From Mizuhopecten yessoensis (Eukaryota), in the NCBI RefSeq assembly GCF_002113885.1, contig NW_018405627.1, positions 955,869-1,019,868 on the forward strand: a DNA stretch of 64,000 nucleotides. Direction: 5' to 3'. The position numbers and the translations under genes were made by a program. The first letter of the stretch is position 1. The number at the start of each line of letters is the position of its first letter. Shown here one piece after another: positions 16,567 to 52,857 of the stretch. The notes beneath the pieces are model-generated. The model was not told where the DNA came from and ran no database searches. It saw only the letters and a list, made by a program, of their open reading frames with translations.

Positions 16567-17844
16567 TCAAGACTTACTCTTGAAAAAGCCATCAACAAAT
16601 ACACTATCCGTTATCACAATATTTGCCACCAAGAAAAACCAGAAACAGAAGAAGTCAATCGCTGACGTCACATCCGGCCAAGTCAACTCCAGTTCTACGA
16701 ACGGTTTCACAGGCGAAAGCTTTGCTTGGTCTTCCAACGGGGATTTTCCCATTTTTCCTTTGCCATTCGAAACGGTAGCCTCAATTTTACTCAGGTCCTG
16801 AACTTTCTTATTCGACTTGTGGCACCGCAACGCTTTGCTTAAGCGAACGATCATTTTTGCTAACATGGGTACTTCAGTATCACGATAGTGAAGTCGAAGC
16901 TCCAAAGTAGTGATCATGACAATTGCAGTGCCCAAAGACAGGAGTAATATAAGATACAAACTTAATAGCGACATCGAAGAACTAACTGGAAGTGACGCAC
17001 TTACAATTGTTAGAAAGACAGCGAACGCCAAATATAACGTCATGATATAGCCCATCTTCTCACCACTATCAACAGGTAAGGCAAAAACGAACACAGACAG
17101 CAGTGACAACATTATGATGGGAAGCACGACATTGTAAAGAATGTACTGAGGTTTCCTCTTTACCGTGATAGAGAATGTAACAATAGCTCCCTCCTGCTGT
17201 GATTCTGAAGATTTGGCAGACGTTGTTAGGAGATCCCATTCGCCATTGGTCTGATACTCATCAAGTAAGATACCTTTACTCCCTAGCTCGACGTCAACGT
17301 CACTCAGCGGGCTAGTCCAAACACCAAATTTGATGTCGCATGTTTGTTTGTCAAAAGGGAAATATTGTATATTAATCGAACATTTCGTCTCAAACACCTC
17401 GTACGGACGCCAATTGACTAGGCCTTCGGCATATATTGTAGTCAGTAAAAAGTCATCCCCAAGCTCCTTCAGTTTTGTAAAACCATTTTCCAAAGCAATA
17501 TCCGGTTTCCATATATTTTTCTGTGGTACGTATATGACCTCAGTATCGTTATCAGCAGACGGGTCCCAATTGATGTAGTCGTTTATCCAATATAGCTCCA
17601 AGAATGCCGTGGAAGACATTTTTTCTTGAACCTCGTCGATGTCGGTTATTCCAACTAGATTCAAATTCACGTACATAACAGTAGGAAGTGACTGGTCTGC
17701 AGAAGGACGAACCATCTTGTTGTACGAGTTGGTTGTGAAGATGTTTGTGAGCAGGGCCTTTACATCATCATGTGTGTTCGATGTGACAGGACAAAACAAA
17801 ATGGCCACCACACCAAGCAGCAATACAAGGGAAATAGTCCTCAT
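16567..17844 (-). CDS. nAChR-like Cys-loop ligand-gated ion channel subunit A (intronless, non-alpha, about 425 aa)
   Basis: Signal peptide, YNKMVRP, IWKPDI, Cys-loop CSINIQYFPFDKQTC, RKP-M1, SGEK-M2, M3, short loop, M4 (IDFFCFWFFL); no vicinal Cys; first ATG at 17844 (the track starts at a GTG). Confidence 0.95.
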   Translation of the reverse strand: MRTISLVLLLGVVAILFCPVTSNTHDDVKALLTNIFTTNSYNKMVRPSADQSLPTVMYVNLNLVGITDIDEVQEKMSSTAFLELYWINDYINWDPSADNDTEVIYVPQKNIWKPDIALENGFTKLKELGDDFLLTTIYAEGLVNWRPYEVFETKCSINIQYFPFDKQTCDIKFGVWTSPLSDVDVELGSKGILLDEYQTNGEWDLLTTSAKSSESQQEGAIVTFSITVKRKPQYILYNVVLPIIMLSLLSVFVFALPVDSGEKMGYIMTLYLAFAVFLTIVSASLPVSSSMSLLSLYLILLLSLGTAIVMITTLELRLHYRDTEVPMLAKMIVRLSKALRCHKSNKKVQDLSKIEATVSNGKGKMGKSPLEDQAKLSPVKPFVELELTWPDVTSAIDFFCFWFFLVANIVITDSVFVDGFFKSKS

Positions 17845-19602
17845 TGTTATCACCTATTCTTCAGTTATGTAAAAGATGCTTCACAAAAGGTACCTTACAA
17901 ATTCACGCGTCTCACTTCCTTTACATGTACAGTCACTTCAAATCGGGAGTGTACGAACAATTATCTCCACTAGACTCCATAAACACAAACATGAACCGTC
18001 AATCAATAGCAATTCATAACTTCCAGCGATATATTGCCTCCTTGAATAAAACAGACACTTGCTTAATCAATGTACTAAGCTTTTTGCTAGATTTATCACA
18101 AAAAGGTCTACAATTATACGAGATACAGCAGTAGTAATTTAACAAATCGTTGCATCATCTGGAAAAACGGTCTACCTGGCGTATTTTCCGTAACGAAATC
18201 TAATATCTGAAATCGAGTTAACCATCCACGTTCTCGGTATAACGTCTCAAATATGTTAAATATACTGCGTTAATGTATCCAGTTATCGAGTAGCACAAGA
18301 ACGGGACTGAGTTTTAAAACCACGGCTTGAATGGATGTCCTACAAAATGTATATATACTTAGCCCGATAAATGTAGAGCTAGTAATTCAATCCAACCTCT
18401 AATTGCCTGTGTTATTTCAGATCTTTTTACAGTAATGATTTGAAGAGGCTATATGTTTATTCACAGCGCTCCTTACTGATGGTTCGATATATAAAAGACA
18501 CTCAAAAATAAACAGTGTGATGAATAAGATAATCATTATGTTATTATTCCCATTGTTCCGTTACACTAGCTAACAAAACAACTTAGGTTTTAAATACGTC
18601 TTGATTCAAATAGGTACCCGCCTGGTACGTGTCACTTGGCTGGTGTGTGAACAGCAATTTCACTTTATTAGTGTATTTGGTAATTATACCGCCTACTTGT
18701 AAAACTCTAAAGTGAAAACAGTGTAATTGTTTGTTGTTGAATATCCAGATTGTATTCTCTTAGTCGTATACAGAAGATTCCCAAGTCACACTGTTAATAC
18801 ACCAAGACATCAGGACGCTTAAGTTGACAATCCAATATGTAAGATATATGGGTATCTGTTCACTGAATAGTTCTGTACGTCACCAGCTGAAAAACCCGTT
18901 AATTCCTTGTTGATATTGGCTAGAACTAGTATGTAGCCGCTGTATGCGATACCTGCTTTCACTACTATAACGACCAGGCTATAGTATCATTGACTCAGAG
19001 GCACCTCTATATAGATTGGAAACGCATACACAATTGAATATCGGACATTAGTTTACTCCTTTGATATTGCTAAATTAGTACTGAATAATTAATATTTACC
19101 AGATGTTTTGATCAATTGTTATAATTAAAAAAATAATATTGAAAGAACGCTTACCTTTTATTTACATTGCCAGACATTCATATTATTTCTTTTCATTTCA
19201 CAACTTAAATAATTATCCAGAGAATATACAATCAAATAATTCTTGTAAAGCTTTTCTAACATTAATGATACTGACTTGCAAACTCATTGCCAGTCGTCTT
19301 GCCTAATGTGGTCTACAAGAAAATGCCACTTTAATATTCTTATTGATTCGTTCATGTTTTACAAATGTAATATCCTTAATTTATATTCCAATACTCTAAT
19401 ACTCTTTAGATCACACATGTCCCTATCTGTAAATACCTCTTTGAATTGAAATAAGATACTGAGAACTGTATTTGAAAAATGATGGCCTAACGGCATGCAA
19501 CCTGTGACCTTTCTAAGCAATGAACACCTTTAGCATACCCGAATATTAAGATCGCTTGTGTGATTAATGAAGAAGGCATAAATACGAATCAATATCAAAA
19601 TA

Positions 19603-19760
19603 GGTAGGAGTGGCGCAGTGGATAACGTACTCGCCTTTCACCAAGGCGACCGAGGTTTGTTTTCCCGATTGGACGTGAAACGGCATGGAGTCACCTACCC
19701 GACTGTGTAATTAAGTTGAAATTACTTATTTCCTAAATGCTGTTAAATAAATAACGTTTA
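19603..19760 (+). mobile_element. Internally deleted copy of the 15.0-kb SINE family
   Basis: Head tggcgcagtggataacgtactcgcctttcaccaaggcg… matches the 15.05-kb copy; V-domain missing. Confidence 0.65.
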
Positions 19761-22327
19761 TATTTTTGTTAATATCAAATGTATTGTATTGACTCATTGT
19801 TCATTAAAACTTAACATAAAAAAAAAGATACCGATTTGCTTTATTGAATGCAACCGAGAGAAACGAAGGAAATAAAACTGAGCAAACAGCTGGACACGAA
19901 CAAGGTAAAAAAAAGCTACTTTTACCCGTTTATAACATAAAACGTATTCAATATGACAATAAAAAACTATTTTCCTGTAGAATATCTGTACCTAGCACTT
20001 GTTGTGTGGTCAGAAAATATGATGTGAGTAATTAAGTAGAAAAATGGTTACTTCAAAGGGTTCAGATGCAAAACTGTTTATCTATAACCATCCATAAACG
20101 TAACAACAAAACACACGAAACATATTTGTTGTTGTTGTTGTTGTTGTTGTATTGTTGTTGTCTTTGGTTAATCGATTATGCATGTCTCGATTCATTAACA
20201 TCAGCAGGACTACATGCCAAAAGTTAACATGCTGAAATCACAGAAGTGTGTTGTAAATTTTATCTATAGTATAATGTATAAAAAAAATGTAATGCACTTG
20301 ATAAGTGTTATATAGTATATAAGATAATATGATAGTCATATTATTAATGGTTATTCAAAAAGATTGTGTTGTTTTAAGTTGTTTTTTATACTTTTAATTT
20401 CGTACATGTGCATGTGTTAAACGAAAGTACAGGATAAGGCTGTATGAATATATGTATTCTATGTATTCTCTAAGAGCCTGTAAATTGAATATACTTCAAA
20501 AACCCCAAGCTTACTAAGGCGAGTTTGATTATTTTCAAATGATAAATATCAAAAGACAGATACTACTCCACTCCCATAATATATCAATACATATATAGAA
20601 CTATCTAAAATAGTTATATTTAATTGAACTCAAAATAAGGTGAGGTTGACATTATATGTTTAAGTCTATGACCGTTGATTGTAGGGCCACAATATATGGC
20701 GAGTCCACCTATAGAAGCCCTAGAAGGCCTAGCGGTCGGGCGTGGATATTTATTATTTTATTCTATATATACATATACATCTCACTATGACCGTTGATTA
20801 AATGGCTACATATACCACCATTTTGGTCTACAAATAAATTACTTTCAGTCAAGCAACAATGATTCATTTATGAAATGATAGCAGACTATAATCCCCCGGA
20901 ATACATACATGGCACAAATGGAAAAGACTCAAGGGAAGAGTACACATATCGATTACGGTTATTTGATGCGAAGCAATCGACACTATGTGTTGCTTGAGCG
21001 CCCCCTTTAAATCTGGTTTCTCCAGTTGACTTAATGTATTGGTCTATGATGTATGTACACAATGCAATTAAGGTCTCTTGTATGTATTAATGGAGATCCC
21101 CGACGCCATCATTGCAGTAACGTTATTCGTACTCGAACATATTCAAACCTCATTGCACTTCTATAATGGATGTAAACTTTCATCACACCCCAAGCAAATA
21201 ACTTTTATACAACTCTATTTATGATTTGATACGCACCGAAAATGTGTTTGAAATTGAGTAATAGAACATTCTTTGTATACATGTATGCTGGTTTCATCAA
21301 CTGCGATGCCTTTGGCGAAGTAGTTTATTTATCGTATTTTTGTACATAATGATATTCAGTAAAATATTTCGTTTAAAATATATATCATAAACATGAAAAC
21401 CTCCTTTAGAGATACTTAATCAAAGTTAACAAAACTGTTCAACTTACAAAATATTCTCTAAAATGCCCTAACGTGCATCAAGGGGAATGTTTATAAGCAA
21501 TTTGATTCGATACCATTGTGTTAATTAATTGCACTTCAATCTTCAATTAAATGCCAGCTTATTGGAGGATCAATAACACCTTCAATACCAAACAATGGTT
21601 CAATTGCCTTTCTTTCTTAATGATGATAGAAGGGACATATATCGTCGCTATGTAGGTTTTCGCTTTTTAGATCTAGACCACTATATAATTTACTTCAATA
21701 TGTATTGTGAGCATTAGATATTGCTAGTTTTGCCTTTACCAACTTTAAGTAAAATAAATAGGGGGACGACGTTAGCTCTGTAAATAATAATTACCATCGG
21801 ACATTATATAAGTACAAAGTACTTGTTTCCGAATCGTTGTTGAATATATATTGAAAATGTAATGTATTGTATATTACCAGAAATAAATACGGTTTAAACT
21901 TATTACCAGAAATGTGATAAAAAGAAGCAGATAACTAAACCAAGTAACTCCTTTACTGCACCACATAGCCATATCAGTATCAGCAGTGGTCCTTACATAT
22001 GTATACAAACAAGATAAGGGGACAATTTACTGATACAAAGTAGTTTATTCAGGTATTTCCTTTGTACTTAGTTCGATTACCGTAAAACAAATTAAGTAAG
22101 GGTATAACGTTTTGTGTATTTGTGTATGTGGTACCTTATCCATTGACACTGTGATGAAAACTGACAAGTTACAGGGTTGAGATAGTTAGTAAGATTACCA
22201 CTGACAACGACAGGATAAGTTGTCTTATATAACACAATAAAAGCGCATGGTCCCACGTTCTGTCAGCATTGGCTTTCAGAAAATATTAAAGTACGATTAA
22301 ACCGTTTCAGATGTCGTTTTATATCTA

Positions 22328-22540
22328 CAGTAAAACCCCACTTCCTAGAACTCTATTTACTCGAATTCCCCTCATTCGTCGAACAGTTCGTTTGATTCCG
22401 ACCGGGTTCGTACATATTCTTTGTAAAGTAACCCCAGATTATCTAATTAGTCGAACCGTTATCCTCAAAAAACCCGTATTCCTCGGACAAAAAAATGTCC
22501 CGACTCTTCATAGTCATAGCGTGTATGCTATGTATTCGTC
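22328..22540 (+). mobile_element. Left end of a Tigger/pogo-type element
   Basis: TA|CAGTAAAACCCC terminus with TCGAA subterminal repeats; partner TIR not found. Confidence 0.45.
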
Positions 22541-23384
22541 GAACATGTGTAACCTGTCACGTCTGACATATATGTTACATGTATTACACCGACAATGCCA
22601 TCGACATGTCTCGCGGCACAGGCTGCAGTCCGGATCCACGCTCATTGTTCTTGTGCGTATACAGGTATCGACTGGACGTCAGATAATTAGAGGATTATAT
22701 AATTAATACCAGTGTCCTTTAGTAACTGTACCGTTTCCCTGTTGTCTCTGCATTACTATTTTGTGTGCATATTTATTTTTCAAGGCGATATTTTGTATGT
22801 TATTAGCCCATATTTATGCATTTTAAGAAGATAAACATCACAATACATATGCTTAACAATACAGAAAGTCAATGGGATTTGTTTTCCTAAAATACGAAAT
22901 ATTTACTCCTTGATGTCAGGATCTCAATTATATTACAATAGTATATTCAGATTATAAGACAAAATAATATGGCAATGACAATATTTGATCTGTTTTTTAA
23001 TCAGAAGTGGAGAAATTCTTAACTGTATAGCCGTACGTTTTAACGGCAGCTGTCGGTGAATTTCTAGCTAACAAAAATGTCTTTTCAGCAGGTGGTATCC
23101 ATTCACTACAACGGCCAACTGAAAGCATTTTGATGCAAAAATAAACATGTGTAAACAATCTAAACAATTCTTACCAAAATAGTATCGTTTTTTTTGTATA
23201 CATATTGAGACAATCTTATGTTACTTGTTATTGATATATTTTGTCTGTTAATGGTTCATCTTAATTATTTTCCTAATTTCGCATATCCTTAAAGTGTCCA
23301 ATAACCTGTATTTTATAATCTATTCACATTAATACATTTCGTAAAATAAAAGTTATTCAACATCTGCATTAAGTATCCCAACAT

Positions 23385-24400
23385 TGTTTGCATAAAGATG
23401 AACCTCTAAACACCGGGACACAACCTTCTGCAAGATTTTAGACAAGAAGGGTATATTTGATACTGGGCGGTAGTTCTTCGATTCCTCCTTGTCCATTCCA
23501 GGCTTCTTCAACAACGATCTTACCTGTGCCTTCTTGGAACACAATGGAACCTTTGACTCAGCCAATGATTTGTTCATGATTGAGGTAATCAAAGGAAGCA
23601 GTGCTTCAAGACACTGCTTTAATAGGTCTTAAGGAAGTGGATCAAGCTCACAGGACTTCGATTGCGAGGTCATCATGACATTGCCTAAATCGCTCTGGGT
23701 TGTTGGTGACAGCTTTGTCAATGGTTCCTCATCAAATTAGAGATATCATTGTCAACAGTAGAGTTCAATCCGCCAATATTTTCCTGATCGTGTTGAATTT
23801 ACAGAAAGTGTAATCACTGACAAGTCTTATTCAGATATACAGCTTGGCAGCTCCGAATAATAAACATTCTTTGATTAAATGAGAACCGAACCAACTAGCC
23901 GGCATTGTTCCCTATAATCTGTTGTTGTTCGGTTAATTTGGTCATTCGCCACCGTTTCTTTGATTTTCGGAGGTTCTGTTTTCCTACGCGAAGATTTTCA
24001 TTATACCACGGGACTTTCGGTCTCAGTTATCACCTTAGTCTGTAGAGGTGCGTGTTTCTCTATGAGGGCTTTAATACCAGATGTGTATGTTTCAACAAGA
24101 TCACCAACCCCACCTTCAGTAGATTGAAGGGCAGAAGAAGACTGAATATGTCATTATTGAAATTTGGTGTTGAAATTATTTTCGGAAGCTCACCTCTTTC
24201 CTTGCACGATATGACTTACATTCACTACAATTCAACATTGCGTGGACAACAAGGTGATCACCAGATATTGCTCCATTAATGACCGAGTTATCTTCCCTTG
24301 TTATGACCACATGCTGAATCAGACCGTGAGTCTAAGTGGAAATTCAGGTCACCCGTTATAATAATCTCTTGTGAATGTGCCTAATTCCATTAGTGTCAAA
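23385..24400 (-). mobile_element. L2-clade LINE ORF2 fragment (endonuclease end to RT start), degenerate
   Basis: GDLNFHLD, SCELDPLP, LLKKPGMDKEESKNYRPVSNIPFLSKILQKVV with stops and frameshifts. Confidence 0.85.
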
Positions 24401-25189
24401 CCAATAACATAGTGTACTTATTGGATGCCCTTTGCAATCAGCATATAAAAAAACTCCATTAATTTCAAAAATCACATTAAGGGGTTATACGCATATGATC
24501 AATGTATACCTCTTGATTTATGTATACTATAAACGTACACTTAAATAAGCCTATCGGAAAACTATGAACATTTACTGCGTATATATATCATACAATCGTT
24601 TCTAAAATAGGGGTTTAAACGGCCCCAGGAGCAAATAATATTAACAACAGTAATATAACGATGCGTTAAATGCTGAATAGGCCTAACTAATATTCACCAC
24701 ATTTGCATTTCTGACTCGTGATCTGAATACGTTGAATACATGTTTTGTTTGTGAACATTTTAAATGTACGTTCAATGAGGTAACCTAGCTGATCCGAACT
24801 ACTCCAACCCTTTAAAGCCCCCTGTTACTTGAGATGCAATCGTCAGCATTTCTTCACAAAGCTCTTTGTGTAAAAACCTTTTGCAGGTGATATACACTCT
24901 TTGCATGTTTTGGTTACCAGGCTAATTTAGATAATTAAGAGGTGCGCTCATCGGCCTTTTGTTACTTGGCTACAATGTATACAATTTTTTCTGGTACATG
25001 TAGGTGACATACATATTTGAATGTAGGGCTGTCAATCACTCAAATAACAAGTTAAACCATATTCAATTGGTAATACCTAAGGGAATTTGTGCGATTGTAG
25101 ATGAAAATGACCTATGTGTACATGCATTGTTTCTTTTATATTGTAAAGAAATATTGCATCATGTTTAATAATTCATATATATAATGATA

Positions 25190-25514
25190 ATAATAATAAT
25201 AATAATTCGAGTTTCTTAGGTCCTCTCAAACCGGTTCTCAAATTATTATCCTTGGTTAAAGATCCTTTGCAACCAGGCAATACCTTTCTCAACTTACTGA
25301 GAAGCATACAGCTGGTGTTGCCATTTCGGCGCTCATAGCTAGCATTCAACAATTCCAGCACTGCCCAACCACGTACTCATTTACAGCTGCGTAGACTGTA
25401 ACAAGCGGAGTAAAGTTTCTTGCTCAAAGATACAACACAGTGCCGTGCCGTGACTCGAAGCCGCAACCATTCGGTCACGAGCCCGTCGTCCTACCACTAG
25501 ACTACCGTGCCTCT
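25190..25514 (-). mobile_element. tRNA-derived CORE-SINE, copy 1
   Basis: Head ggtagtctagtggtagg…ttcgagtc, CORE-like ttgagcaagaaactttact…agctgtaaatgagtac, (TTA)n tail. Confidence 0.8.
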
Positions 25515-26619
25515 ATATCTTAAATCTTAAATATTATTAATATAAAAGAATGTTTCTTTATGTCTACCTTGTGTATTTGATAAGAATACATTTGAAATTC
25601 TTTTCAAGTCCAGATCACGTTTGCTTATATAACGTTTTGATACCTCGGCCTAACTGAACATATGACTGTCGGAGCTACCTCCCCTGTGGCTGCTAGGTGT
25701 TTTGATTAATTTTAGTTGGCGAAATGTCTGCCTCCGACAAATCTCATTATTTAACATCACATTTCGGTTAGTTAGTGAGGTTAAATAAAATGTAACTAAA
25801 ATGAGTTTGGGTTAATTATGAAATACTTGCATTGACTTATAGTTATTGAAGTTTTTTTTTAACATTGGTCATACAATAAATTGACCTTTGGATGACACAT
25901 TTACCGAATACCGATTTGTTTTCGAAATTTCTGCTATCGTCAGTCAACAAAATGTGTCAAATAGGATCCAATGTCTGTTGTAGTACAAAAACCGAAAATG
26001 TGTCTATCACTTCCGTAAAGATGCGACAACTAAAAATGTACACAACATAATAAAATTGTATGTGTGTGAGACTGCATAACCTTTTTATTTTTTCTATCTT
26101 TATAGTTGACCTCATCATGAGCACCTGACTTTAATGACGACAACTTTATTAAATGATTAAACATGACTATATGCCAAAAGGTTATTGGATTTTATTTGGA
26201 AATAGACATTGCTATAATTTGTCATTTATATGGCAAAACCGGTTCTCAAATTTTCTGATATTTTTTACCATCGTCCCTCAACATAATGCAACAACTAATA
26301 TTAAAAGATTTCTGGTGTACAAGTCCCGGAAATTGGTGTGTCCCTTCCGTAAAAATTGACAAAGCAAAAAAAAGAGTATGAAAATACCAACATTTAAGAG
26401 TTTAAGATTGCAGAACTGTTTTATCATGCAACGTTTTGTTAAATGTTTGAGTTCATAATTTGCAGCAGATCCTACTTTAAACAATATAATATTATTTGAT
26501 AGCGTAAAACATTGTTTTGATAGTTATTTGGACAAAAGAGTGAACCCTGTCGTACACCTTTGGAGGGCGGCACTAAAAAGGCCATAGCACAAGCCCCGGG
26601 GACCTATATCATGGGTCGT

Positions 26620-30181: not shown

Positions 30182-31471
30182 CTAATTATTGCTCAGAAAG
30201 TAGCCATTCACAAATATAGTAACCGTCATTGATATGTTTGCCAGCAAAAAGAACCAGAAGCAGAAGAAATCAATTGCTGACGTCACATCAGGCCAAGTGA
30301 ACTCTTCACTCGATTCTGGTTCTTCGAATGCTTTAACGACAGTCGGCTCCTCTACCGACTTGGCGTTTTCTGGGGTTTTCTTGTCTTTTGAAACGCGTTC
30401 CTCGAATTGGCTTACATCCTGTACTTTCTGAGTAGACTTGAGGCAGCGGAACGTTTTGCTGAAACGAATCATGCATCTAGCAAACTTGGGAATGGCACGA
30501 GAACTGTCTCGGTAGTGGATTCGGAGTTCCAGTGTCGTAATCATGACAATTGCTGTTCCCATACACAGAAGTAATATCAGGTACAAACTCAGTAACGACA
30601 TGGAGGCGCTAGATGGAAGTGACGCACTTACAATTGTTAGAAAAACTGCAAATGCCAGATACACTGTCATGATGTAGCCCATCTTCTCTCCACTGTCAAC
30701 GGGTAGAGCAAATACAAAGATAGAAAGCAATGACAACATGACAATGGGAAGCACAACGTTGTATGAAATGTACTGAGGTTTCCTCTTTACCGTGATAGAG
30801 AACGTGACAACAGCTCCATCCAGATTTGATTGCGTTGCGTTTGAAGATGTTTTGATAATATCCCATTCACCGTTCGGCTGATATTCATCTAGTAATATTC
30901 CTTTACTGCCTAGCTCAACGTCAACGTCACTCAGTGGGGTCATCCAAACTCCAAATTTGATGTCGCATGTTTGTTTGTCAAAAGGGAAATACTCTATGCT
31001 AATAGAACATTTCGTCTCGAACACCTCGAAAGGACGCCATTCGATGTGACCGTCGTTCGATATTCTAGTCAGTAAAAAGTCATCCCCAAGCTCCTTAAGT
31101 TTTGTAAAACCATTTTTCAAAGCAATGTCTGGTTTCCATATAGCACTCTGTTGAACGTATATGATGTTAGTGTTATTATAGTTGGATGGGTCCCATTGCA
31201 TATATTCGTCTATCCAGAAAATATCCAAGAATGCCGTGGAAGACATTTTTTCTTGAACCTCGTCGATGTCGGTTATTCCAATAAGATTCAAATTCAAGTA
31301 CAATATAATAAGGTGTGACTGGTCTGCAGCAGGACGAACCATCTTGTTGTAAGAGTTGGTTGTAAAGATGTTTGTGAGTAGGGCCTTTACATTATCATGT
31401 GTGTTTGATATGACAAGGCACGGTAATATGAACACCACACCAAGTAGTATAACCGGTAATTTACTTCCCAT
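30182..31471 (-). CDS. nAChR-like Cys-loop ligand-gated ion channel subunit B (intronless, non-alpha, 429 aa)
   Basis: Close paralogue of A; Cys-loop CSISIEYFPFDKQTC, GEK-M2, four TM helices, no vicinal Cys. Confidence 0.95.
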   Translation of the reverse strand: MGSKLPVILLGVVFILPCLVISNTHDNVKALLTNIFTTNSYNKMVRPAADQSHLIILYLNLNLIGITDIDEVQEKMSSTAFLDIFWIDEYMQWDPSNYNNTNIIYVQQSAIWKPDIALKNGFTKLKELGDDFLLTRISNDGHIEWRPFEVFETKCSISIEYFPFDKQTCDIKFGVWMTPLSDVDVELGSKGILLDEYQPNGEWDIIKTSSNATQSNLDGAVVTFSITVKRKPQYISYNVVLPIVMLSLLSIFVFALPVDSGEKMGYIMTVYLAFAVFLTIVSASLPSSASMSLLSLYLILLLCMGTAIVMITTLELRIHYRDSSRAIPKFARCMIRFSKTFRCLKSTQKVQDVSQFEERVSKDKKTPENAKSVEEPTVVKAFEEPESSEEFTWPDVTSAIDFFCFWFFLLANISMTVTIFVNGYFLSNN

Positions 31472-36943: not shown

Positions 36944-39522
36944 CTAGGCGTGACTTTCCTGATATCCTGTCAAAAATAACACTAATGTCCCTAACATAAC
37001 TGTTGTGAGAAAAATCCAGAAACAGTAAAAGTCAATAGCGGCAGAAACAGACATCCACGATATTGTAACAATGTCCTCGTCTTTGTCATCGACGGTGGAC
37101 GTTTTCGTGACTGTATCTGTCGCCTGATCGACAACCTTTCGTCGGCGTCTTCGGCATTGGAGAACCAGACTGAATCTCACGAGACATTGCACCCATCCCG
37201 GGATTTCACGGGAACTGTCTCTAAAATGAATTCTTAGTTCAACTGCTGTTATCACAATTATTAAAGTACCTACAACTAAAAGAAATATAAGATACTTTCC
37301 TAAAAGAGACATGTATGACGAAACCGGAAGTGACGCACTTACAATTGTAAGAAACACCGCAAAGGCTAAATACACTGTCATACAGAAACCAAGTTTTTCA
37401 CCACTATCTACTGGAATCGCAAATGTAAACACAGATAAAATTGAAAGCAGGAGAATTGGAGCCACGACATTGTATATATAGTACTGTGGTTTACGATCCA
37501 TGTAGAGCGAAAACTTGACATTAGCATTGTTAGATTTAGATATGTAAGTTGTGGCACTGGTTTCAGTTAAATCCCATTCGCCATTCTCTTGATAGCTGTC
37601 TTCAGTCATCGCTGCAACTCCTACTCTGACCATGACGTCATCGACTTCGCTCGTCCAGACTCCGACGTTAATATCACATTTTTGTTTGTCGAAGGGAAAG
37701 TATGTGATGTCCATGGAACATTTTGTTTCAAAAATTTCGTACGGAACCCAGTAAACGGTTCCGTCGCTTTTGATATTAAGCAAGAGAAAGCTGTCACCTA
37801 GCTCCGTCATCTTCGTGAAGCCATTTTCCAATGCTATGTCGGGCCTCCACACTTTCGACTGTGGCACGAGGATCTGTTAAGACGAGCAGTCAGCAGATGT
37901 ATTACATGTATATCAGGTTTAGTGAGTCGCAAATAAAAGTGTATTTTGGATTTATAAATGTTTACATTGATAAGGGTTCATTAGAAGCAATATAAATACT
38001 AAAATCAAAAATACGCCACTCGCTAGAATTATTGCTCAAACATTGAGTTATTTAATTGATGAAAAAATTAATGTTTATTATGCAATAGTGTGATGAGGTA
38101 GTTTATAAGGCATTGGATTTTTAGTTTTTGTTTTAAATCAAATATCTGACAAAAGGTGGGAGACGCATAAGGCGGGTATTTTGTTTCATAGGAGGATTAC
38201 TTTCCTAAATGGCAAAAGACGTTGGAAATGTTTTCAGGTTGCAATACAAACCTATGGGCTTGTTAGAGTCGTGTGCTACGCCATGTCAATCGGTAAAGGA
38301 TCGATCAGACATTGATCAGATTAAAAATGTGTGCATATTATGTCATATTTACACCTACTATTTAAGGAATCCCAAAAGACGAAACTCATAATAATAGATA
38401 ATAATATTTCGAGGTTCTTATATACCGCTTTATCGCAACCTAGTTGGTAGGTTATCTGTGGTTGCAACCACTCGACTTTCTCGACTCCCTGGGGAGCATA
38501 CAGCCAGAGCTGTCATTTCGGCGCTCATAGAGCTAGCATTCAACAATTCTAGCACTGCCCACACCACGTACTCATTTACAGTTGAGTAGACTGGAACAAG
38601 TGGAGTAAGTATCTTGCTCAGGGATACAACACAGTGCCGTGCCGTACCGTGCCGTGCCGTGCTGTGCTGTGACTCGAACCCGCAACCCTTTGGTCACGAG
38701 CCCGGCGTCCTACCACTAGACTACCGTGTCCTCTCGAAATTCCTAAACTAAAACAATACATACATATATACATAATTTGAAAGTGACAAATCGTCAGTAC
38801 AAAAATGTCCATGTATGCCGTTGTATGGAGATTTTGACGTTGAAACTGACTTTCCAAACTTACGTGAGGCCAGTATTTAATACATTTAATACTGGACTAA
38901 CTAAAGGACGAAAATCCAATGCCTTATAAGCTACCCCTACTTCATCGTAAAACTCAAACCAGCATATTTTCAAAAAACACTAAAATTCAACACTTTAGTT
39001 GTATGTATATTGATTGCAATAATAATCCTATGACAACAAACACACATGTATTCGGGAAAAAAAATACATTGATTTCCAAAACTCACATTTTGAAGTTTTG
39101 CATTAGGACCTGACGAATCATTAAGTTAACCAGACTTTGATCGACTTGGGTAAGATGACGTGAATATCGACGTCACGAATAAGTGTGCTTAATAAGGTTA
39201 TACGAACCGAAGAGAGTCCTCCGTATGTCGCCGGGTCCCACATCAAGTGTTCGTCTGTCCAGAACAAAGTAAGGAATACTGTCGTTGTAAGTTTTTCCTC
39301 CACTTGGTCAACATCCGTTATACCTGCTAGGTTAAAGACGACAGTCACATACGTTGGATAGAACTGGTTGTAAGTCGGTCGGATTTCTTTGTTGTAAGAT
39401 CCGGTGACAAATAACGCCGTCGTCAGGTTTTGGACGTCATCGAACGTCGATGCTGACGTCATTGAAGTCACAATGAAGATCACGCTGACTATTAAGATGC
39501 TTGTCACGTTATATTTAGACAT
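36944..39522 (-). CDS. nAChR-like Cys-loop subunit C, two coding exons (39208-39522 and 36944-37873), about 414 aa
   Basis: Phase-0 intron TCG|GTTCGT…TTAACAG|ATC joins WDPATYGGLSS-ILVPQSKVWRPD, collinear with intronless A/B; Cys-loop CSMDITYFPFDKQKC, GEK-M2, M4 intact. Confidence 0.9.
38390..38734 (-). mobile_element. tRNA-derived CORE-SINE, copy 2 (in the intron of subunit C)
   Basis: Closely similar to 25190-25514, with an expanded (GCCGT)n tract. Confidence 0.85.
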
Positions 39523-43810: not shown

Positions 43811-45019
43811 ATGTCAACTCCCCCTTTGAAGATTGTGGTTTGTGGTGGTGGAAACGGAGCTCACGTGTTTTCAACTTTAGCAGCCACGCGCGCAAACACT
43901 GACGTCAGTGTTCTCACAATATTTGAGGACGAAGCAGAGAGATGGACAAAATCCATGAAAGACGGTGTGATGGTATCCTTCACTGCAGCGTCGAACCAAG
44001 TGAAATCAAGACCGTCTTTAGTCACAAAAGATCCAGCAGCCGTGATCCCAAGAGCTGACGTCATAGCAGTAGTTGTACCATCTTACGCGCATGCTCCAGT
44101 CTTGCAAGCTATTCTCCCTTTCTGTAGACCAAACACATTCATCGTTGGTCTTCCGGCACATGCTGGTTTTGACTTCCAGTTTACACATATTTTTGGAAGC
44201 AAAGCAAAAGAATGTACTCTAGCTGTATTTGAGACATTACCTTGGGCATGTCGAATAATTGAATATGGTGCCCATGCGCAGGTTCTTGGGACAAAAGAAC
44301 GAGTAGGTGCCGCGTTGTTACAGGGGGAAAACAGCAACGTCCCATTTGACTGCATTGCCACACTTCAACAACTGATTGGGGACAAGCCGAAGCTGAAAAT
44401 GGTACAAAACAGTCTCGTCGTAAATCTGATGGCTAAAACTATGATACATCCACCAATTATGTACGGGAAATGGAGAAATTGGGATGGAAAACCAGTCAAG
44501 CAGAAACCTCTCTTTTATCAGGGAATGGATGACGCCCAGGCAGATTTGTTGACTCGAGTTAGCGACGAAGTCTTGCTCATCTCCCAAACAGTCAAAGACA
44601 AATGCAACAAAATTGTCCTTGACATTTCACCGATTACTCACATCCAAGATTGGATAAAGGAATATTACGGCGACCAGGTGAAGGACGGAAGTTCGCTGAA
44701 ACTCTCATTCCAGACGAACCAGGCGTACAACGGCCTTGTTCATCCACTGAAAGACGCAGAGGACGGGGGCTACGTTCCGGACTTCTCATATCGATACGTT
44801 CGTGAAGATGTTCCGTTCGGATTGGTCGTACTGAAAGGAATTGCCGAGATCGTCGATGTATCCACTCCGGCTATGGATACTGTGATCAGTTGGGCGCAAG
44901 AGAAACTAGGGGCGGAGTATATTGTTGGAGCCGAGCTCAAGGGTCGTGACTTATCACAGACAAGGGCTCCGCAAGTGTTTGGTATCCAAACAGTTGACCA
45001 ACTGATGCTATCCAATTAG
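43811..45019 (+). CDS. Opine dehydrogenase (octopine/tauropine/strombine dehydrogenase family), intronless CDS, 402 aa
   Basis: Rossmann motif VCGGGNGAH, DEAERW, FETLPWACRI, IHPP, WDGKP..PLFYQG, YRYVREDVP (His/Arg/Asp catalytic residues as in scallop octopine dehydrogenase); ATG at 43811 follows the acceptor TTGCAG. Confidence 0.95.
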   Translation: MSTPPLKIVVCGGGNGAHVFSTLAATRANTDVSVLTIFEDEAERWTKSMKDGVMVSFTAASNQVKSRPSLVTKDPAAVIPRADVIAVVVPSYAHAPVLQAILPFCRPNTFIVGLPAHAGFDFQFTHIFGSKAKECTLAVFETLPWACRIIEYGAHAQVLGTKERVGAALLQGENSNVPFDCIATLQQLIGDKPKLKMVQNSLVVNLMAKTMIHPPIMYGKWRNWDGKPVKQKPLFYQGMDDAQADLLTRVSDEVLLISQTVKDKCNKIVLDISPITHIQDWIKEYYGDQVKDGSSLKLSFQTNQAYNGLVHPLKDAEDGGYVPDFSYRYVREDVPFGLVVLKGIAEIVDVSTPAMDTVISWAQEKLGAEYIVGAELKGRDLSQTRAPQVFGIQTVDQLMLSN

Positions 45020-46014: not shown

Positions 46015-47118
46015 ATGATAAGGTCAATAGCAAAATGGATACAAGAAGGGCAAGAGTAGAGAAATAAAATGGTAATGTTATAACAAATCAGTCTGAAATA
46101 TTAAAAGAAATTGAACTCTTCTATAAAAACTTTTAAAAAATGATAATATACACGATGAAGACTTAAATATGTTATTAAATGATTAGAATGTGCAAAAACT
46201 ATCGGATATTGATTCTGAAGCTTTAGAAGAACCATTGGACATTATTGAACTTGCAAAAACTTTAATGAAAATGAAAATCAACAAAAGTCCAGGATCGGAT
46301 GGTTTCACAGCTTTTTTTTTTTTTTTTTTTTTTTGGAAAAGCATTGGACATTTTATTGAAAGATCTATACATTTTGGTTTTAAGATAACAAACCCATCTG
46401 AAACACAAAAACAAGGAATAATAACATGTATACCAAAGGGAGATAAATCTAGAATTTATTTTGAAAAATTGGAGACCGATAACATTACTTAACATTGTAT
46501 ATAAAATTGCTTCAAGTTCAATTGCTAATAGAATGAAAAATCTTTTAAAGAAATTAATCAGTACTGATCAGACAGGCTTTATTCCGGGGAGATATACTGG
46601 CGAAAACACTAAGACTGATCTATGATATTATACATTACACAGAGGAAAATAATTTACCAGGACTTTTATTACTAATTGATTTTGAAAAAGCATTTGACTC
46701 TATCTCATGGATTTTTATCAGTAAAACACTTGACTTTTTTCAATTTTGGTAAAAATGTAATTAAATGGATCAACTTATTCCAACATGATTCCAAATCAGC
46801 AGTAGTTCAAGGTGGCAATTTGTCAAACTTTTTTAATATTGAGCGTGGGTGCAGACAAGGGGATCCAATATCGCCATACATATTCATTCTCTGTGCTGAA
46901 ATTTTATCGATTATATTGAGAAATAATAAAAATACCAAAGGTATAAAAATAAGAGATAAGGAGTTTTTACAACACGCAGATGCATATGACACCACAGTCA
47001 TACTAGATGGCACTAGATTATCTCTAAATTCCACTATTTCAGACTTAAATAAATATGCCAGAATTTTAGGACTGAATTTAAATATTTTAAAAACCCAAGT
47101 GATTTGGACTGGCAACTG
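46015..47118 (+). mobile_element. L1/Tx1-clade LINE reverse transcriptase fragment, frameshifted
   Basis: NKSPGSDGFT, GIITCIPKGDK, NWRPITLLN, DQTGFIPGR, IDFEKAFDS, RGCRQGDPISPYIF, degenerate YADD. Confidence 0.92.
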
Positions 47119-48999
47119 AATATAATTCATTCCGCATACTATTTTAGCAATTGTCCTGTCAAATTAGACATAAAGATCGTACATCTAATTTTTCTCCTTA
47201 ATATGACATATAACAGCAATTATAATGTCAACGTGTCTGAGAAATTGGGTAGGATTTTCAAATGTCACAGTTTACTTTTAGTCAGGTTTGATATTTTTGT
47301 ATTTCGTATCCGATGATATGATGTTCCGTATACAAGAAAATGATAACCTTACACGGATGATATTTGAACTGAACGTTACTATATTAAATTGATCAAGACA
47401 AGTTCATAATAAATCAACAGTAGGCTGAAACAGTTAGATTATAGCTTGATTGTAGATATAGGGACCGCAGTACCAAATGATTTTCCATTGACGATAGTGT
47501 TAACGTTTACCACTGTCCTGGTTAAATGGGGTTATCCACACTGGTTTACGTGCCCTCATTTTGAAGAATATCATCTCACACAACTGTAAATAAAATATTT
47601 AAAAATTCTGCCTATTTGAACTTTTTGTATATGGGGGCCGCCATTTTGTATAGATTTTTTTTTTATACATTTTACATCTATATGTATTGCTCAACCCACA
47701 CATAAAACTTTTGAAACTTCTGCCACCTAAATATCCAACCAACAGGCCCCGAGGCATCTTCTGCCCAAAAGGGAAAACCCCACAATCTATTTTTGATTTG
47801 GTTCCGTGGTCCCTATATATGACCTTGTTACAGGAGAGGAATAAATAAGTTGGCATATCTTGTGTCCAATCATTTTGTACATATTTATGCAATATAATTT
47901 AAAATCGGCAAACCTACCAAATATACACGTAGAAATTTACATATGCACGACATGAACGTTGAGGTTGTTTTAGTAAAACCCATAAAAGAATGTGTATGTA
48001 CAGGGACATTGAATACATTTTCATAAAACTAAACCCTGTACTAGCAGGCACAGCAACAGTAAACCCCGCAATTAAAAAACCTAGATATTCGTAACGAAAA
48101 CGAATCTGAACATAATATTCAAGCAAGTTGTTGTAGCGCTACAAAGACACGGTGGAGTTTTAGACACTTAAGCCACACTCAGACATTTTCACGCAATATG
48201 AGGTAATATCATCAACCGTTAACACAGTTTCATTTCATTATAATTACACTATGGTATTAAAAAATCAAAAACATCTTCAACTCTCACATGCAAGATGAAT
48301 AAGTGTTAACGAGTCCGAGAGCATATTCAGACAAAGGACAAAAAACAACAAAATAGAAAATAATTTACATGTGTTTTTGTCCGCAAGTAAAACAGTATAA
48401 GCAAAATATTTAATAAGATTCATCAGTTTGGAAATACTTTACATCGCAGTTTTACATTACGCATGGACTGGACCCTTTGTCATAGCTTGACAAATGGACC
48501 AGTCGGGCTTGAAGCGTTGCGACACGTTTAATACGTACATTGTTTGTGTATAAAGTAAAACTTCGATATTCGTATAAGCAAAAGTAAACATATCAAAAGA
48601 AATTGTTAATTTAAGTCATATACAATGTTTAAGCTTTCAAGAATCAACATACTGATTCAGCTATATTCATTCAATAAAATAAAAACATAAATAAAAATTG
48701 TACACAGTCTGGAACAGTGAAAGGAAAAACAGAAAGCAGGTGTTTAAAGATACATTGAAGAATTATCAGAAAATATTCAAGCAAGTGCAATTAAGTTAAA
48801 TCACATTGTGCCATGCTCCTTTCACATACATTGCTATTACTGACATTGCTTGGTGGGCTCTGTTGACTTTTGGGGGCAATAGAGGAGCATGTTATAACAC
48901 CATTAGCTCTTATTTTGGTGCGCCTCAAACACGTACAATGGGGAGAGCGTGTTTCCAACACAATCAATTACGCAGTGATGTGTGTCTCACCTAAAATAG

Positions 49000-49654
49000 T
49001 CTAGTTGTTTGTGTAGCCAACACTTATGATGGCGTAGTTGTCTCTCTGTGTGTGTGTGGGTGGGTGCGTGTGTGTTTCCAAAACTTACGATTGTGTAGTA
49101 GTGTGTATGTGTGTATGTGTGTGGGTGTGTATGTGTGTATGTGTATGTGGGTGTGGGTGTGTTTCCAAAACTTACGATTGTGTAGTAGTGTATGTGTGTT
49201 TTCAACACCTACTATATGTTAAGTTGTAGTTGTTTGTGTCTGACACTAACGATGGTGTAGTAGTGTGTATGTGTGTGGGTGAGTGGGTGCTTGTGTGTTT
49301 CCAAAACTTATGAGTGTGTAGTAGTGTGCATTTGTGTTGGTGTATGCGTGTTTCCAAACTTTACGGTTGTGTAGTAGTGTGTATGTGTGTGGGTGTATGT
49401 GTGTGGGTGAGTGGGTGCTTGTGTGTTTCCAAAACTTACGAGTGTGTAGTAGTGTGTATGTTTGTGGGTGTATGTGTGTTTCCAAACCTTACGATTGTGT
49501 AGTGTATGTAGTGTATGTGTGTTTCCAAACCTTACGATTGTGTAGTGTATGTAGTGTATGTGTGTTTTCAACACCTACTATGTTGTAGTTGTTTGTGTCC
49601 GACACTAACGATGGTGTAGTAGTGTGTATATGTGTGGGTGTATGTGTGTGGGTG
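49000..49654. repeat. Complex TG-rich minisatellite
   Basis: Recurrent tttccaaaacttacgattgtgtagtagtgtgtatgtgtgt units; abuts the truncated 3' end of subunit D. Confidence 0.9.
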
Positions 49655-50468
49655 TACATCCATCCATGTGGGGTTTTTTGGTATCCACTTCCGGTCCATT
49701 TTCGTCCTGGATTACCTTTTCCGGCATTTGGTCAACACTCCTTTGTCGACAAGTACGGCATTGTAAGAAAGGACTGGATCTCACAAGACCTTGGACACAG
49801 CCAGGTATTTCACGGGAACTTTCTCTGAAATGTATCCGTAGCTCCAATGTGCTAATTATCACAATAAGTGTTCCTATCACTAGGAGAAATAAAAGGTATT
49901 TCCCGAGGAGCGACAGTACAGACGAAACCGGAAGTGACGCACTTACAAACACAGCGAAAGCTAAATACACTGTCATACAGAAACCAAGTTGTTCGCCACT
50001 CTCTAACGGGATCGCAAATGTGAACACAGATTGAAGTGAAAGCATAAGGATGGGAGACACAATATTATACATGTAGTATTGTGGTTTACGCTGTATACTG
50101 ATTGAGAAAATTATCATAGAGCTTTGAGTTAATATAAAGGTTTCGGCACTGTGTCCAACTAAATCCCATTCGCTATTTGCCTGGAAATTTGTCAAACTAA
50201 TGGCGAATTTGCTTAGCCTTACAATCACTTCTTCTATTTCACTGGTCCATACTCGAACGTTGATAGCACATGTTTGCTTGTCAACGGGGACATACTCCAC
50301 ATCCATCGTACATTTCGTCTGAAACACCTCGTACGGTTCCCAGAGAAGAGATCCATCACTTAGAACACTAATCAAGACAAAACTATCACCTAGAGCCTTC
50401 ATCTTGGTGAAGCCATTGTCCAATGCCATGTCGGGAGTCCACACTTCAGTCTGAGGTATTAGGAGCGA

Positions 50469-51041: not shown

Positions 51042-51074
51042 TTCCATAAAATGTAAGGCATATATGACGTCACT

Positions 51075-51650: not shown

Positions 51651-51761
51651 TATGCTTCACATTATTGTAATGTTTTATCGTAGGGCACCAATGTAAAAAT
51701 TGAAACTTTCTTTTTAATATATTCAATTATATTGGAAGGGCTGTGCATATATTTCGAAAAG

Positions 51762-51893
51762 TGACGTTTCGATGACTAGTACGGTATATGTACTCTGTCA
51801 CCTTCATCAGACAAATGTGTAAAGCTGCACTGGTCATTTGTCTGATGAAAGTGACAGAGTACATACCGTACTAGTCATCGAAACGCCACATAG
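51762..51893. ncRNA. Palindromic pair of degenerate hammerhead-ribozyme-like motifs (Penelope/retrozyme type)
   Basis: CTGATGA-stem II (gtgac/gtcat, agtac/gtact)-CGAAAC on both strands; stems I and III are weak. Confidence 0.5.
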
Positions 51894-52857
51894 AAACACT
51901 AATTGGTTGTGTAACAAGAAACTTTTCAGAATCCATATACTTACCAACACGAAATAAATGTTTAGAAAGTGCTGTGCATATAGTTTTATGTTGATCGGCT
52001 GGATCACGAAATGTTACCCTGACAACATAAATGTTAGAATTAATACTCACCTTTGCTTCACCGCCATATAAATCTGGATCCCATACAAGATTATCGTCGT
52101 TCCAATTTAGGCTTACAGAGGCAGTAGTGGTGAGGTTTTCCTCCACAACGTTAATTTCCATGATTCCTACAAGGTTTAATCTCGTCTCCACAAATACCGG
52201 TGTATTATGATCCTTAACGGGGCGTGTGAACTTATTGTAAGAACCTTTGGTGAAAATATCCTGCCATAGTTTCTTAACGTGGTCAATTGTCTCCTCTGAC
52301 GTCACAAACACGATGTAATGACCAACAATAAACTGCAAAGTTAGACATGTGAAGACTTTCCCAAGAACGGACTGAGGCATATTTGCTTTGATGAAGACTG
52401 TTTACAAACAAAATAGTAATCGCAAGATCAAAACGGATATTTATTTACCAATTTTATCTGGCACGGGTTAAATGATTTTTTTTGTAGAAAATCGTCCCAG
52501 GGATGGATCGATTGATTTTAATTTCAGTAGCTTATGGTACAAATCTCATTAACCAATGTTTTCGCTGGATTTTGATTTGTTTGAGACACTCGTCGTACCT
52601 ATCCTGGTTGTGAATGTTGCAGTCTGAAAAATGAAACAGGTCAATATTTCATATCAAAATATTTCATGTAAATCTTCTTATCAAAGCCCTGCGTATACAT
52701 ATCTATACCTGGTTATCTGTGTAAATACTTGTGTCTGCCACTGCACGTGTTGTTAATTAATAATATTAAGGTTCTAAACTATTTAGGAGCAGTGTATTTG
52801 CGATCTGGCGGCACCTGAGAACAACATTCTAGAAGGAAATGAATTCAGGAGGCTGTA

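What the first reader, a model, noticed from the sequence alone, without database searches (positions are those of the whole stretch)
16567..52380. Tandem array of nAChR-derived channels that have lost the acetylcholine site: candidate bivalve chemosensory receptor cluster
Seen: four co-oriented paralogues with a Cys-loop, a cation-type GEK motif (GEQ in D) and 9' Leu. The loop A Tyr is replaced (ALENG/ALKNG/ALENG/ALDNG), the loop D Trp is replaced (F/F/F/S), and loop C is short with no vicinal Cys and no YxCC..Y motif. Only the loop B Trp remains, and the M3-M4 loop is short. Known: cephalopod chemotactile receptors are intronless, tandem, nAChR-derived channels lacking ACh-binding residues, and bivalves have large intron-poor nAChR expansions of mostly unknown function. 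Inference: these subunits detect non-cholinergic, possibly environmental, ligands.
Basis: partly seen in the sequence, partly recalled or inferred. Interest (0 to 1): 0.8.

Follow-up and report, generated by a model that had tools for sequence, protein, structure and literature searches.

The report
Scallop orphan nicotinic-like channel gene cluster
Four neighbouring scallop genes encode nicotinic-receptor-like ion channel subunits that have lost the acetylcholine pocket; three look functional and one is decayed, but they belong to an already described bivalve gene expansion, and a chemosensory role is untested.

Summary
The window (Mizuhopecten yessoensis) carries four minus-strand Cys-loop receptor genes. 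A and B are intronless. C and D share one phase-0 intron. All four keep the Cys-loop, the GEK/GEQ cation motif and 9' Leu. All four lack the loop A Tyr, the loop D Trp, and the loop C vicinal Cys and Tyr residues. Only the loop B Trp remains.

New here:
- The loss is shared across the clade. Of 121 sequences (the four copies plus bivalve homologues), none has a loop C Cys-Cys and one has an aromatic at loop A.
- A, B and C are intact and under purifying selection (dN/dS 0.1-0.3).
- C is transcribed and spliced as modelled.
- D is degenerate: no M4, a 3-residue M2 deletion, and VPVD in place of FPFD.
- The rebuilt pocket has its own conserved residues, including an Arg in loop E.
- A site-wise codon test found no positive selection.
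- The closest solved structures are canonical nAChRs. Cephalopod chemotactile receptors are not among them.

This is a member of the published bivalve intron-poor tandem nAChR expansion. The non-cholinergic reading is plausible. The chemosensory reading has no support yet: no tissue data could be obtained. Another first-stage note of this scan (s1-528188) covers the A/B part of this stretch.

The parts
16567..17844 (-). Gene A: intronless 425-aa nAChR-like non-alpha subunit (ATG at 17842-17844, stop at 16567-16569)
   Evidence: ORF. Pfam LBD 2.3e-42 plus transmembrane domain. Identical to database protein P0003. AF2 model pLDDT 85.5 with an ECD beta-sandwich and M1-M4. Best PDB hits are alpha7 and beta2, E about 2e-47.
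30182..31471 (-). Gene B: intronless 429-aa paralogue, 71% identical to A
   Evidence: ORF. Pfam. Best PDB hits are beta4, alpha7 and beta2, E 1e-54 to 1e-51. The public model P0001 covers only residues 76-429.
39208..39522 (-). Gene C exon 1 (signal peptide to '...GGLSS'); GT donor follows
   Evidence: Sequence. Splice joint 37873|39208 seen in an 845-nt transcript contig of run X1 and in one raw RNA-seq read of X21. The public model P0025 uses the same junction.
37874..39207 (-). Gene C intron (1334 nt, phase 0, GT..AG); contains an interspersed repeat at 38356-38810
   Evidence: RNA depth is zero except over the repeat.
36944..37873 (-). Gene C exon 2 (loop A to M4 and stop); joined model is 414 aa
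   Evidence: Exon covered in runs from four studies.
52051..52380 (-). Gene D exon 1; GTGAGT donor at the same position and phase as in C
49605..50468 (-). Gene D exon 2: degenerate. GEQ instead of GEK, 3-residue deletion in M2 (15'-17'), Cys-loop VPVD instead of FPFD, no M4; the ORF runs into a minisatellite
   Evidence: Homology to the full-length orthologues P0036 and P0035 ends near 49674. VPVD is unique among 121 sequences.
49010..49656 (.). GT/CA-rich minisatellite that occupies the place of D's M4 exon sequence
   Evidence: Tandem Repeats Finder. Three-frame translation shows no M4.

Best explanation
The window holds a four-gene tandem array of the bivalve-specific, intron-poor nAChR-like expansion in the Yesso scallop. 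Each gene encodes a non-alpha Cys-loop subunit with a signal peptide, a ligand-binding-type ectodomain, four transmembrane helices and a short cytoplasmic loop.

Shown: the pore and gating hardware of a cation channel is intact and conserved. This covers -1' Glu, 9' Leu, the Cys-loop FPFD, the pre-M1 Arg and the M2-M3 Pro.

Shown: four of the five aromatic-box residues that hold acetylcholine are gone. Charged residues sit at pocket positions: Glu/Lys/Asp at loop A, and Arg at the loop E Leu119 position in A and B.

Inferred: A, B and C are subunits of pentameric cation channels that are not gated by acetylcholine through their own interfaces. They respond to some other, probably polar or charged, ligand. 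The conserved Trp-Arg (loop E), Trp (loop B) and Ser/Gly (loop C) residues would form a rebuilt site, and neighbouring near-neutral positions vary between paralogues. Where they act (sensory epithelium, neurons, other tissue) is not known.

D is a decaying copy.

The array grew by tandem duplication. The 5' (ectodomain) halves of neighbouring copies have since been partly homogenised by gene conversion.
For: Family and fold:
- Pfam.
- PDB sequence hits beta4/alpha7/beta2, E 1e-54 to 1e-47.
- AF2 pLDDT 85.5. Foldseek and VIA-align top hits are all nAChR chains, Z 29-33, 25-29% identity.

Pocket loss:
- In 121 sequences (the four copies plus bivalve homologues), loop A is aromatic in 1 and Cys-Cys is absent in all.
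- Loop B Trp is present in 120, -1' Glu in 120, 9' Leu in 121.

Function retained:
- dN/dS is 0.10-0.33 in A/B-clade pairs.
- By region, pN/pS is 0.11 for M1-M3, 0.13 for the ectodomain scaffold, 0.36 for the pocket loops and 0.61 for the cytoplasmic loop.
- 141 of 229 ectodomain codons are under significant purifying selection. These include Arg146 (p=0.002), Ser178, Ser215 and Gly219 of the rebuilt pocket.
- C's exons are covered in runs from four studies, and the predicted splice joint is seen in a transcript contig and a raw RNA read.

Cluster history:
- Orthologous intronless tandem arrays exist in Pecten maximus, Argopecten irradians and Ylistrum balloti.
- In the tree, A and B fall in a 15-row pectinid clade and C and D in a 4-row pectinid clade, both with 100% support.
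- Synonymous divergence in the ectodomain is lower than in the transmembrane part: 0.29-0.41 vs 0.63 for A-B, and 0.26 vs 0.66 for Pm1-Pm3.

D lesions.

Literature: the bivalve expansion is intronless and tandem, and few subunits keep ACh sites (PMC6896357). Divergent molluscan clades have binding-site substitutions (PMC13174522).
Against: - No ligand, current or assembly partner is known.
- Non-binding accessory subunits of heteromeric nAChRs would also keep the pore and gating elements and be under purifying selection.
- No pocket site shows positive selection. Several pocket positions evolve as if neutral, which also fits a pocket that is no longer used.
- Expression was tested for C only. 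It is low, and the tissue is unknown.
- The pocket residue mapping rests on sequence alignment to alpha7 and beta2.
Confidence: 0.55

Rival explanations
1. Accessory subunits. A, B and C do not bind any ligand themselves. They co-assemble with canonical alpha-type scallop subunits, as vertebrate beta1, beta3 or alpha5 do, and tune conductance, desensitisation or trafficking of acetylcholine-gated receptors.
For: They are beta-like: no vicinal Cys, and loop C only 2 residues shorter than in beta2. Best sequence matches include beta4 and beta2. Pore and coupling elements are conserved. Pocket positions are partly near-neutral with no positive selection. Loop B Trp is also kept in non-binding beta subunits.
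Against: Ordinary beta2 and beta4 keep the loop A Tyr and loop D Trp that are lost here. Some rebuilt pocket residues are under significant purifying selection: Arg146, Ser215, Gly219. In oyster, 33 of 132 nAChR genes are alpha-type and only 13 of those keep the principal ACh site (PMC6896357), so there are few canonical partners for so many non-alpha subunits. Some intron-poor bivalve nAChR genes are expressed before ChAT and AChE appear (PMC6896357).
Confidence: 0.3
2. Bivalve chemosensory receptors. The array encodes peripheral receptors for environmental chemicals in mantle tentacles, gill, palps or larvae, convergent with cephalopod chemotactile receptors.
For: Shared with CRs: nAChR origin, intron-poor genes, tandem arrangement and loss of ACh residues (PMC11526382). 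Hypervariable columns are enriched in pocket loops: 15 of 79 vs 8 of 130, Fisher p=0.005. The idea that divergent molluscan nAChR clades add an ionotropic chemosensory component has been raised in print (PMC13174522).
Against: There are no tissue data. A site-wise test gave 0 positively selected ectodomain sites, whereas strong diversifying selection in the pocket is reported for octopus CRs (PMC11526382). The pocket positions are charged rather than hydrophobic. Gene conversion homogenises the ectodomains of neighbouring copies. No cephalopod sequence is among the 120 nearest homologues, and no CR chain is among the best PDB matches.
Confidence: 0.12
3. Non-functional relics. The whole array is made of decaying retrocopies without a role.
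For: D is clearly degenerate. Intron-poor bivalve nAChR genes more often show no or low expression (PMC6896357). RNA depth over C is low.
Against: A, B and C have intact ORFs with dN/dS 0.1-0.3 and transmembrane pN/pS 0.11. Intact orthologues exist in three other scallop genera. C is spliced and present in runs from four studies.
Confidence: 0.03

Closest known systems
Bivalve intron-poor, tandemly duplicated nAChR expansion (Jiao et al. 2019, PMC6896357; molluscan-specific families in PMC10338036; clades with binding-site substitutions in PMC13174522)
   Same: Intronless or one-intron genes. Tandem arrays. Lineage-specific clades: A/B and C/D fall in pectinid-only clades, with mussel, oyster, clam and unionid sequences outside. 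Most members are non-alpha and lack the conserved ACh site. M. yessoensis was one of the genomes surveyed.
   Different: Nothing categorical. This report adds detail for one array: a residue-level pocket map, conserved rebuilt-pocket residues, ectodomain-limited gene conversion, one decayed member and RNA proof of the C intron.
Cephalopod chemotactile receptors (CRT1 and relatives; van Giesen 2020, Allard 2023, Kang 2023, as summarised in PMC11526382)
   Same: nAChR-derived pentameric cation-channel subunits, intron-poor, in tandem clusters, without the ACh-binding aromatic residues.
   Different: There is no evidence of common descent beyond the nAChR family. The 120 nearest homologues are all bivalve, and CR structures are not among the best 50-60 PDB matches. 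Pocket positions are charged here but hydrophobic in CRs. No positive selection was detected. C and D have an intron. No sensory expression or ligand is known.
Vertebrate non-alpha nAChR subunits (beta2, beta4; structural beta1)
   Same: These are the best sequence matches (E 1e-54 to 1e-47). Shared features: no vicinal Cys, similar loop C length, GEK and 9' Leu pore, loop B Trp retained.
   Different: Beta2 and beta4 keep the loop A Tyr and the loop D Trp that make the complementary ACh face. The scallop proteins have E/K/D and F/S there, and A and B have Arg at the loop E Leu position. The cytoplasmic loop is about half as long.
Alpo4, orphan lophotrochozoan nAChR-like receptor of Alvinella pompejana (PMC10338036)
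   Same: A lophotrochozoan nAChR-like subunit without the loop C Cys-Cys, not activated by ACh or serotonin, with unknown ligand.
   Different: Alpo4 keeps the aromatic residues of loops A, B, C and D (F103, W159, Y199, Y205, W65). The scallop proteins keep only loop B Trp.

Membership tests
Cys-loop pentameric ligand-gated ion channels, nAChR branch | Neur_chan_LBD plus Neur_chan_memb domains, 13-residue Cys-loop, four transmembrane helices | tested here: met
   Pfam hits for all four genes. C-x13-C is present in 120 of 121 aligned sequences, including A-D. The AF2 model of A has an ECD sandwich and helices M1-M4. nAChR chains are the top PDB matches by sequence and fold. D lacks M4.
Cation-selective nAChR-type pore | -1' Glu (GEK motif) and 9' Leu in M2 | tested here: met
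   GEK in A, B and C; GEQ in D; 9' Leu in all. Selectivity itself was not measured.
Alpha-type nAChR subunit | Vicinal Cys-Cys and flanking Tyr residues in loop C | tested here: not met
   No Cys-Cys in A-D or in any of the 121 aligned sequences. The alpha7 Tyr188 and Tyr195 positions are Q and G in A.
ACh-binding complementary subunit (beta2/beta4-like) | Loop D Trp55/57 plus conserved loop A Tyr and hydrophobic loop E residues | tested here: not met
   Loop D is F/F/F/S. Loop A is E/K/E/D. The loop E Leu119 position is R/R/V/E.
Bivalve intron-poor tandem nAChR expansion (PMC6896357) | 0-2 introns, tandem array, lineage-specific clade | tested here: met
   A and B are intronless; C and D have one intron. 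Four co-oriented copies lie within 36 kb. Pectinid-only clades have 100% support. Orthologous arrays exist in three other scallops.
Cephalopod chemotactile receptors | Membership of the CR clade in a phylogeny | not testable with these tools
   No cephalopod CR sequence could be obtained by reference. Indirect evidence: the 120 nearest homologues are all bivalve, and no CR chain appears among the 60 best PDB sequence hits or the 50 best fold hits.
Cephalopod chemotactile receptors | Hydrophobic ligand pocket | tested here: inconclusive
   By alignment, pocket positions carry Glu/Lys/Asp (loop A), Glu/Asp (loop D +2) and Arg (loop E) in A and B.
Cephalopod chemotactile receptors | Diversifying selection on pocket sites | tested here: not met
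   FEL-type site test on 13 scallop A/B-clade genes, 229 ectodomain codons: 0 sites with beta>alpha at p<0.1. Power is low and gene conversion is present.
Cephalopod chemotactile receptors | Expression in a sensory epithelium and activation by environmental ligands, not ACh | not testable with these tools
   RNA runs are coded, so the tissue is unknown.

The most novel reading that the evidence does not exclude
A, B and C assemble into cation channels gated by a soluble polar or zwitterionic environmental or dietary cue. The ligand would be held by the conserved loop E Arg, the loop A acidic residue and the loop B Trp. The channels would be expressed in scallop mantle tentacles, gill, palps or larvae. 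That would make them the first nAChR-derived chemoreceptors outside cephalopods, arisen independently.
Probability: 0.12. Interest if true: 0.8.

Novelty: new member of a known kind. Interest (0 to 1): 0.38.

Why it matters
Bivalves carry 100-200 nAChR-like genes. What most of them bind is an open question raised by the papers that described the expansion. This array is a compact, well-defined test case:
- three intact paralogues, with orthologous arrays in three other scallop genera;
- a pocket that has lost acetylcholine chemistry but kept a small conserved residue set of its own;
- one natural loss-of-function copy.

If a non-cholinergic ligand were found, it would show a second, independent conversion of nicotinic receptors to a new ligand class in molluscs. 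As it stands, the cluster is an ordinary member of a published expansion.

Tried and rejected
- Phylogeny with cephalopod CRs: not possible. No CR sequence could be fetched by reference, and typing one was not an option.
A site-wise likelihood test that sums over internal states was written instead. Its global lnL reproduces IQ-TREE's.
- Locating the window on the scaffold through protein A: no record for P0003.
- Search for D's M4 with orthologue C-termini: nothing beyond 49674; only a minisatellite.
- Flanks of A, B, C and D share no similarity outside the coding sequence, so there is no recent segmental duplication.
- Rfam and tRNA scans of the highly expressed repeat in C's intron found nothing.
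- Protein Atlas gave only generic nAChR clusters.
- Paper searches for functional work on scallop or bivalve divergent nAChR-like channels found none.
- The all-pseudogene reading was rejected for A, B and C on dN/dS and RNA evidence.
- The joined C and D protein models were never sent to a search tool. Exons were searched by reference. Joining was done only in local scripts for alignment and codon statistics.
Full report
**What is there**

The window comes from Mizuhopecten yessoensis. Proteins identical to its ORFs sit on a 1.81-Mb scaffold, and the nearest relatives are from Pecten, Ylistrum and Argopecten.

Four Cys-loop receptor genes lie on the minus strand:
- A: 16567-17844, intronless, 425 aa.
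- B: 30182-31471, intronless, 429 aa.
- C: exons 39208-39522 and 36944-37873, 414 aa.
- D: exons 52051-52380 and 49605-50468.

tblastn finds no further copy in the 64 kb. Identities are 71% for A-B, 59% for C-D and about 50% for A-C.

C and D share a phase-0 GT..AG intron at the same codon position. Between C and D lie an intronless octopine-dehydrogenase-like ORF and a reverse-transcriptase fragment.

I used the HMMER alignments to human alpha7, beta2 and beta4 chains.

| alpha7 position | Residue in A / B / C / D |
|---|---|
| Loop A Tyr93 | E / K / E / D |
| Loop D Trp55 | F / F / F / S |
| Loop B Trp149 | W in all four |
| Loop E Gln117 | N / E / Y / L |
| Loop E Leu119 | R / R / V / E |

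Loop C is five residues shorter than in alpha7 and has no Cys-Cys. The two loop C Tyr positions are Q and G in A. M2 reads GEK (GEQ in D) with 9' Leu.

One caveat on its reading: beta2 and beta4 also keep the loop B Trp. Its retention says nothing about a ligand site.

**How wide the loss is**

I aligned the 120 best database relatives, all bivalve, with the four copies. Public models identical to A, B and C were replaced by the window copies, giving 121 sequences.
- None has a loop C Cys-Cys.
- One has an aromatic residue at loop A.
- 120 keep the loop B Trp, 120 the -1' Glu, 121 the 9' Leu and 120 the Cys-loop pair.

The pocket loss is thus an old, clade-wide trait of a large bivalve expansion. 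It is not a feature of this array alone.

A maximum-likelihood tree puts A and B in a 15-row pectinid clade and C and D in a 4-row pectinid clade. Both have 100% support. Mussel, oyster, clam and unionid sequences fall outside.

Orthologous intronless tandem arrays exist in P. maximus (three genes about 9 kb apart), A. irradians and Y. balloti. Two more paralogues lie elsewhere on the same M. yessoensis scaffold.

**Are the genes alive?**

Pairwise dN/dS in the A/B clade is 0.10-0.33. By region, pN/pS is as follows:

| Region | pN/pS |
|---|---|
| M1-M3 | 0.11 |
| Ectodomain scaffold | 0.13 |
| Pocket loops (A-G) | 0.36 |
| Cytoplasmic loop | 0.61 |

Invariant positions across 97 homologues include the Cys-loop Pro/Asp, the pre-M1 Arg and the M2-M3 Pro. 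These are the elements that couple ectodomain movement to the gate.

Reads and contigs from four runs of four studies cover C's exons and leave the intron silent, apart from an interspersed repeat. The predicted joint 37873|39208 is present in an 845-nt transcript contig without mismatches and in one raw RNA-seq read. The public model of C uses the same junction. Depth is low, and the tissues are not disclosed.

D is different. Its orthologues P0036 and P0035 are full length. D's similarity to them stops just before M4, where a 650-bp minisatellite begins. D's M2 also lacks three residues. Its Cys-loop reads VPVD, unique among the 121 sequences. D is most likely a decaying copy.

**Is the pocket used?**

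Hypervariable columns are enriched in the pocket loops: 15 of 79 against 8 of 130, Fisher p=0.005.

I wrote a site-wise codon likelihood test in the FEL style. It used 13 intact A/B-clade genes from four scallop species and 229 ectodomain codons. Its global likelihood reproduces IQ-TREE's value.
- No site has beta>alpha at p<0.1.
- 141 sites are under significant purifying selection.
- Near-neutral sites lie in strand beta1 (A53), loop E (A142, A144) and loop C (A216, A217).
- Conserved residues in the pocket loops are Trp145 and Arg146 (loop E; Arg p=0.002), Trp176 and Ser178 (loop B), and Ser215 and Gly219 (loop C).

The pocket is therefore neither simply dead nor visibly under diversifying selection. 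It has a new conserved core flanked by freely varying positions. Power is low, and gene conversion violates the single-tree assumption.

**Gene conversion**

Between neighbouring paralogues, synonymous divergence is lower in the ectodomain half than in the transmembrane half.
- A-B: 0.29-0.41 in the ectodomain against 0.63.
- P. maximus copies 1 and 3: 0.26 against 0.66.
- The A-Pm2 interspecies pair (Pm2 = P. maximus copy 2, the best match to A) shows high synonymous divergence throughout.

Flanking DNA of the four copies shares no similarity. This partly confirms the scan's separate note on A/B mosaicism (s1-528188). The low-pS tracts are real, but only one 20-codon window is nearly silent-site identical.

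**Structure and closest known**

The AF2 model of A (pLDDT 85.5) is a standard nAChR subunit with a cytoplasmic segment of about 69 residues.

Foldseek and VIA-align rank muscle, alpha7, alpha4beta2 and alpha3beta4 chains first, with Z 29-33 and 25-29% identity. 5-HT3A follows closely. No cephalopod chemotactile receptor entry appears among the best 50 or among the 60 best sequence hits.

**Literature**

- Jiao et al. 2019 (PMC6896357) described 99-217 nAChR genes in bivalves, M. yessoensis included. The genes are mostly intron-poor and in tandem arrays. Few subunits keep the principal ACh site, and the authors ask what the ligands are.
- The MolluscaGenes preprint (PMC13174522) reports clades with substitutions at agonist-contact positions. 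It describes a CR-like clade that includes bivalves. [quoted passage not shown]
- Alpo4 (PMC10338036) is a solved lophotrochozoan orphan, but it keeps the aromatic residues.
- A 2024 bivalve tentacle study states that CRs are known only from cephalopods (PMC11682238).
- I found no functional study of a bivalve member.

**Verdict**

The sequence observation is right and is extended here.

The most likely reading (about 0.55) is that A, B and C are subunits of orphan, non-cholinergic, cation-selective channels. An accessory role in ACh receptors is the main rival (about 0.3). The specific chemosensory claim has no direct support (about 0.12).

The parallel with cephalopod CRs is one of gene architecture and loss of ACh residues only. 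Clade membership could not be tested. The hydrophobic-pocket comparison is inconclusive and leans against the parallel. Diversifying selection was tested and not found.

The array is a new, well-characterised member of a known kind.

The joined C and D models were used only in local scripts. Search tools received exons by reference.

Noticed in passing
window 43775-45019 (+): Intact intronless 414-aa ORF between genes C and D. It is strongly similar to Pecten maximus octopine dehydrogenase (PDB 3c7a, E 6.5e-114; Pfam Octopine_DH). It may be an opine dehydrogenase retrocopy or paralogue.
   Followed up: partly
window 46676-47119 (+): Reverse-transcriptase fragment (Pfam RVT_1, E 1.7e-9) between the dehydrogenase ORF and gene D.
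   Followed up: no
window 38356-38810 (intron of gene C); second copy 25267-25514: Interspersed repeat with very high depth (10^3-10^5 word depth) in all four runs laid, with many internal joints and variants. No Rfam family or tRNA match.
   Followed up: partly
window 17140-31290 (A vs B) and L002 (P. maximus copies 1 and 3): Synonymous divergence is much lower in the ectodomain half than in the transmembrane half between tandem paralogues in two species. This fits gene conversion limited to the 5' part of the coding sequence. Flanks share no similarity.
   Followed up: partly
window 30182-31471 and 39463-39522: Public gene models are N-terminally short. The model of B (P0001) starts at residue 76 of an intact 429-aa ORF. 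The model of C (P0025) starts at Met21 and so lacks the signal peptide.
   Followed up: yes
P0036 (P. maximus orthologue of D): The annotated protein has a 22-residue insertion exactly at the C/D intron position. This is probably a mis-called splice site in that annotation, and a hint that the intron is shared across scallop genera.
   Followed up: no
window 58031-60040 (+): 669-aa single-exon ORF with at least ten C2H2 zinc fingers (Pfam zf-C2H2, E 2.3e-61).
   Followed up: no
L001 531-1799 (-) and 10001-11296 (+): Two further paralogues (422 and 431 aa) in divergent orientation lie elsewhere on the same 1.81-Mb scaffold. The family is therefore dispersed in several small arrays on this scaffold.
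   Followed up: partly
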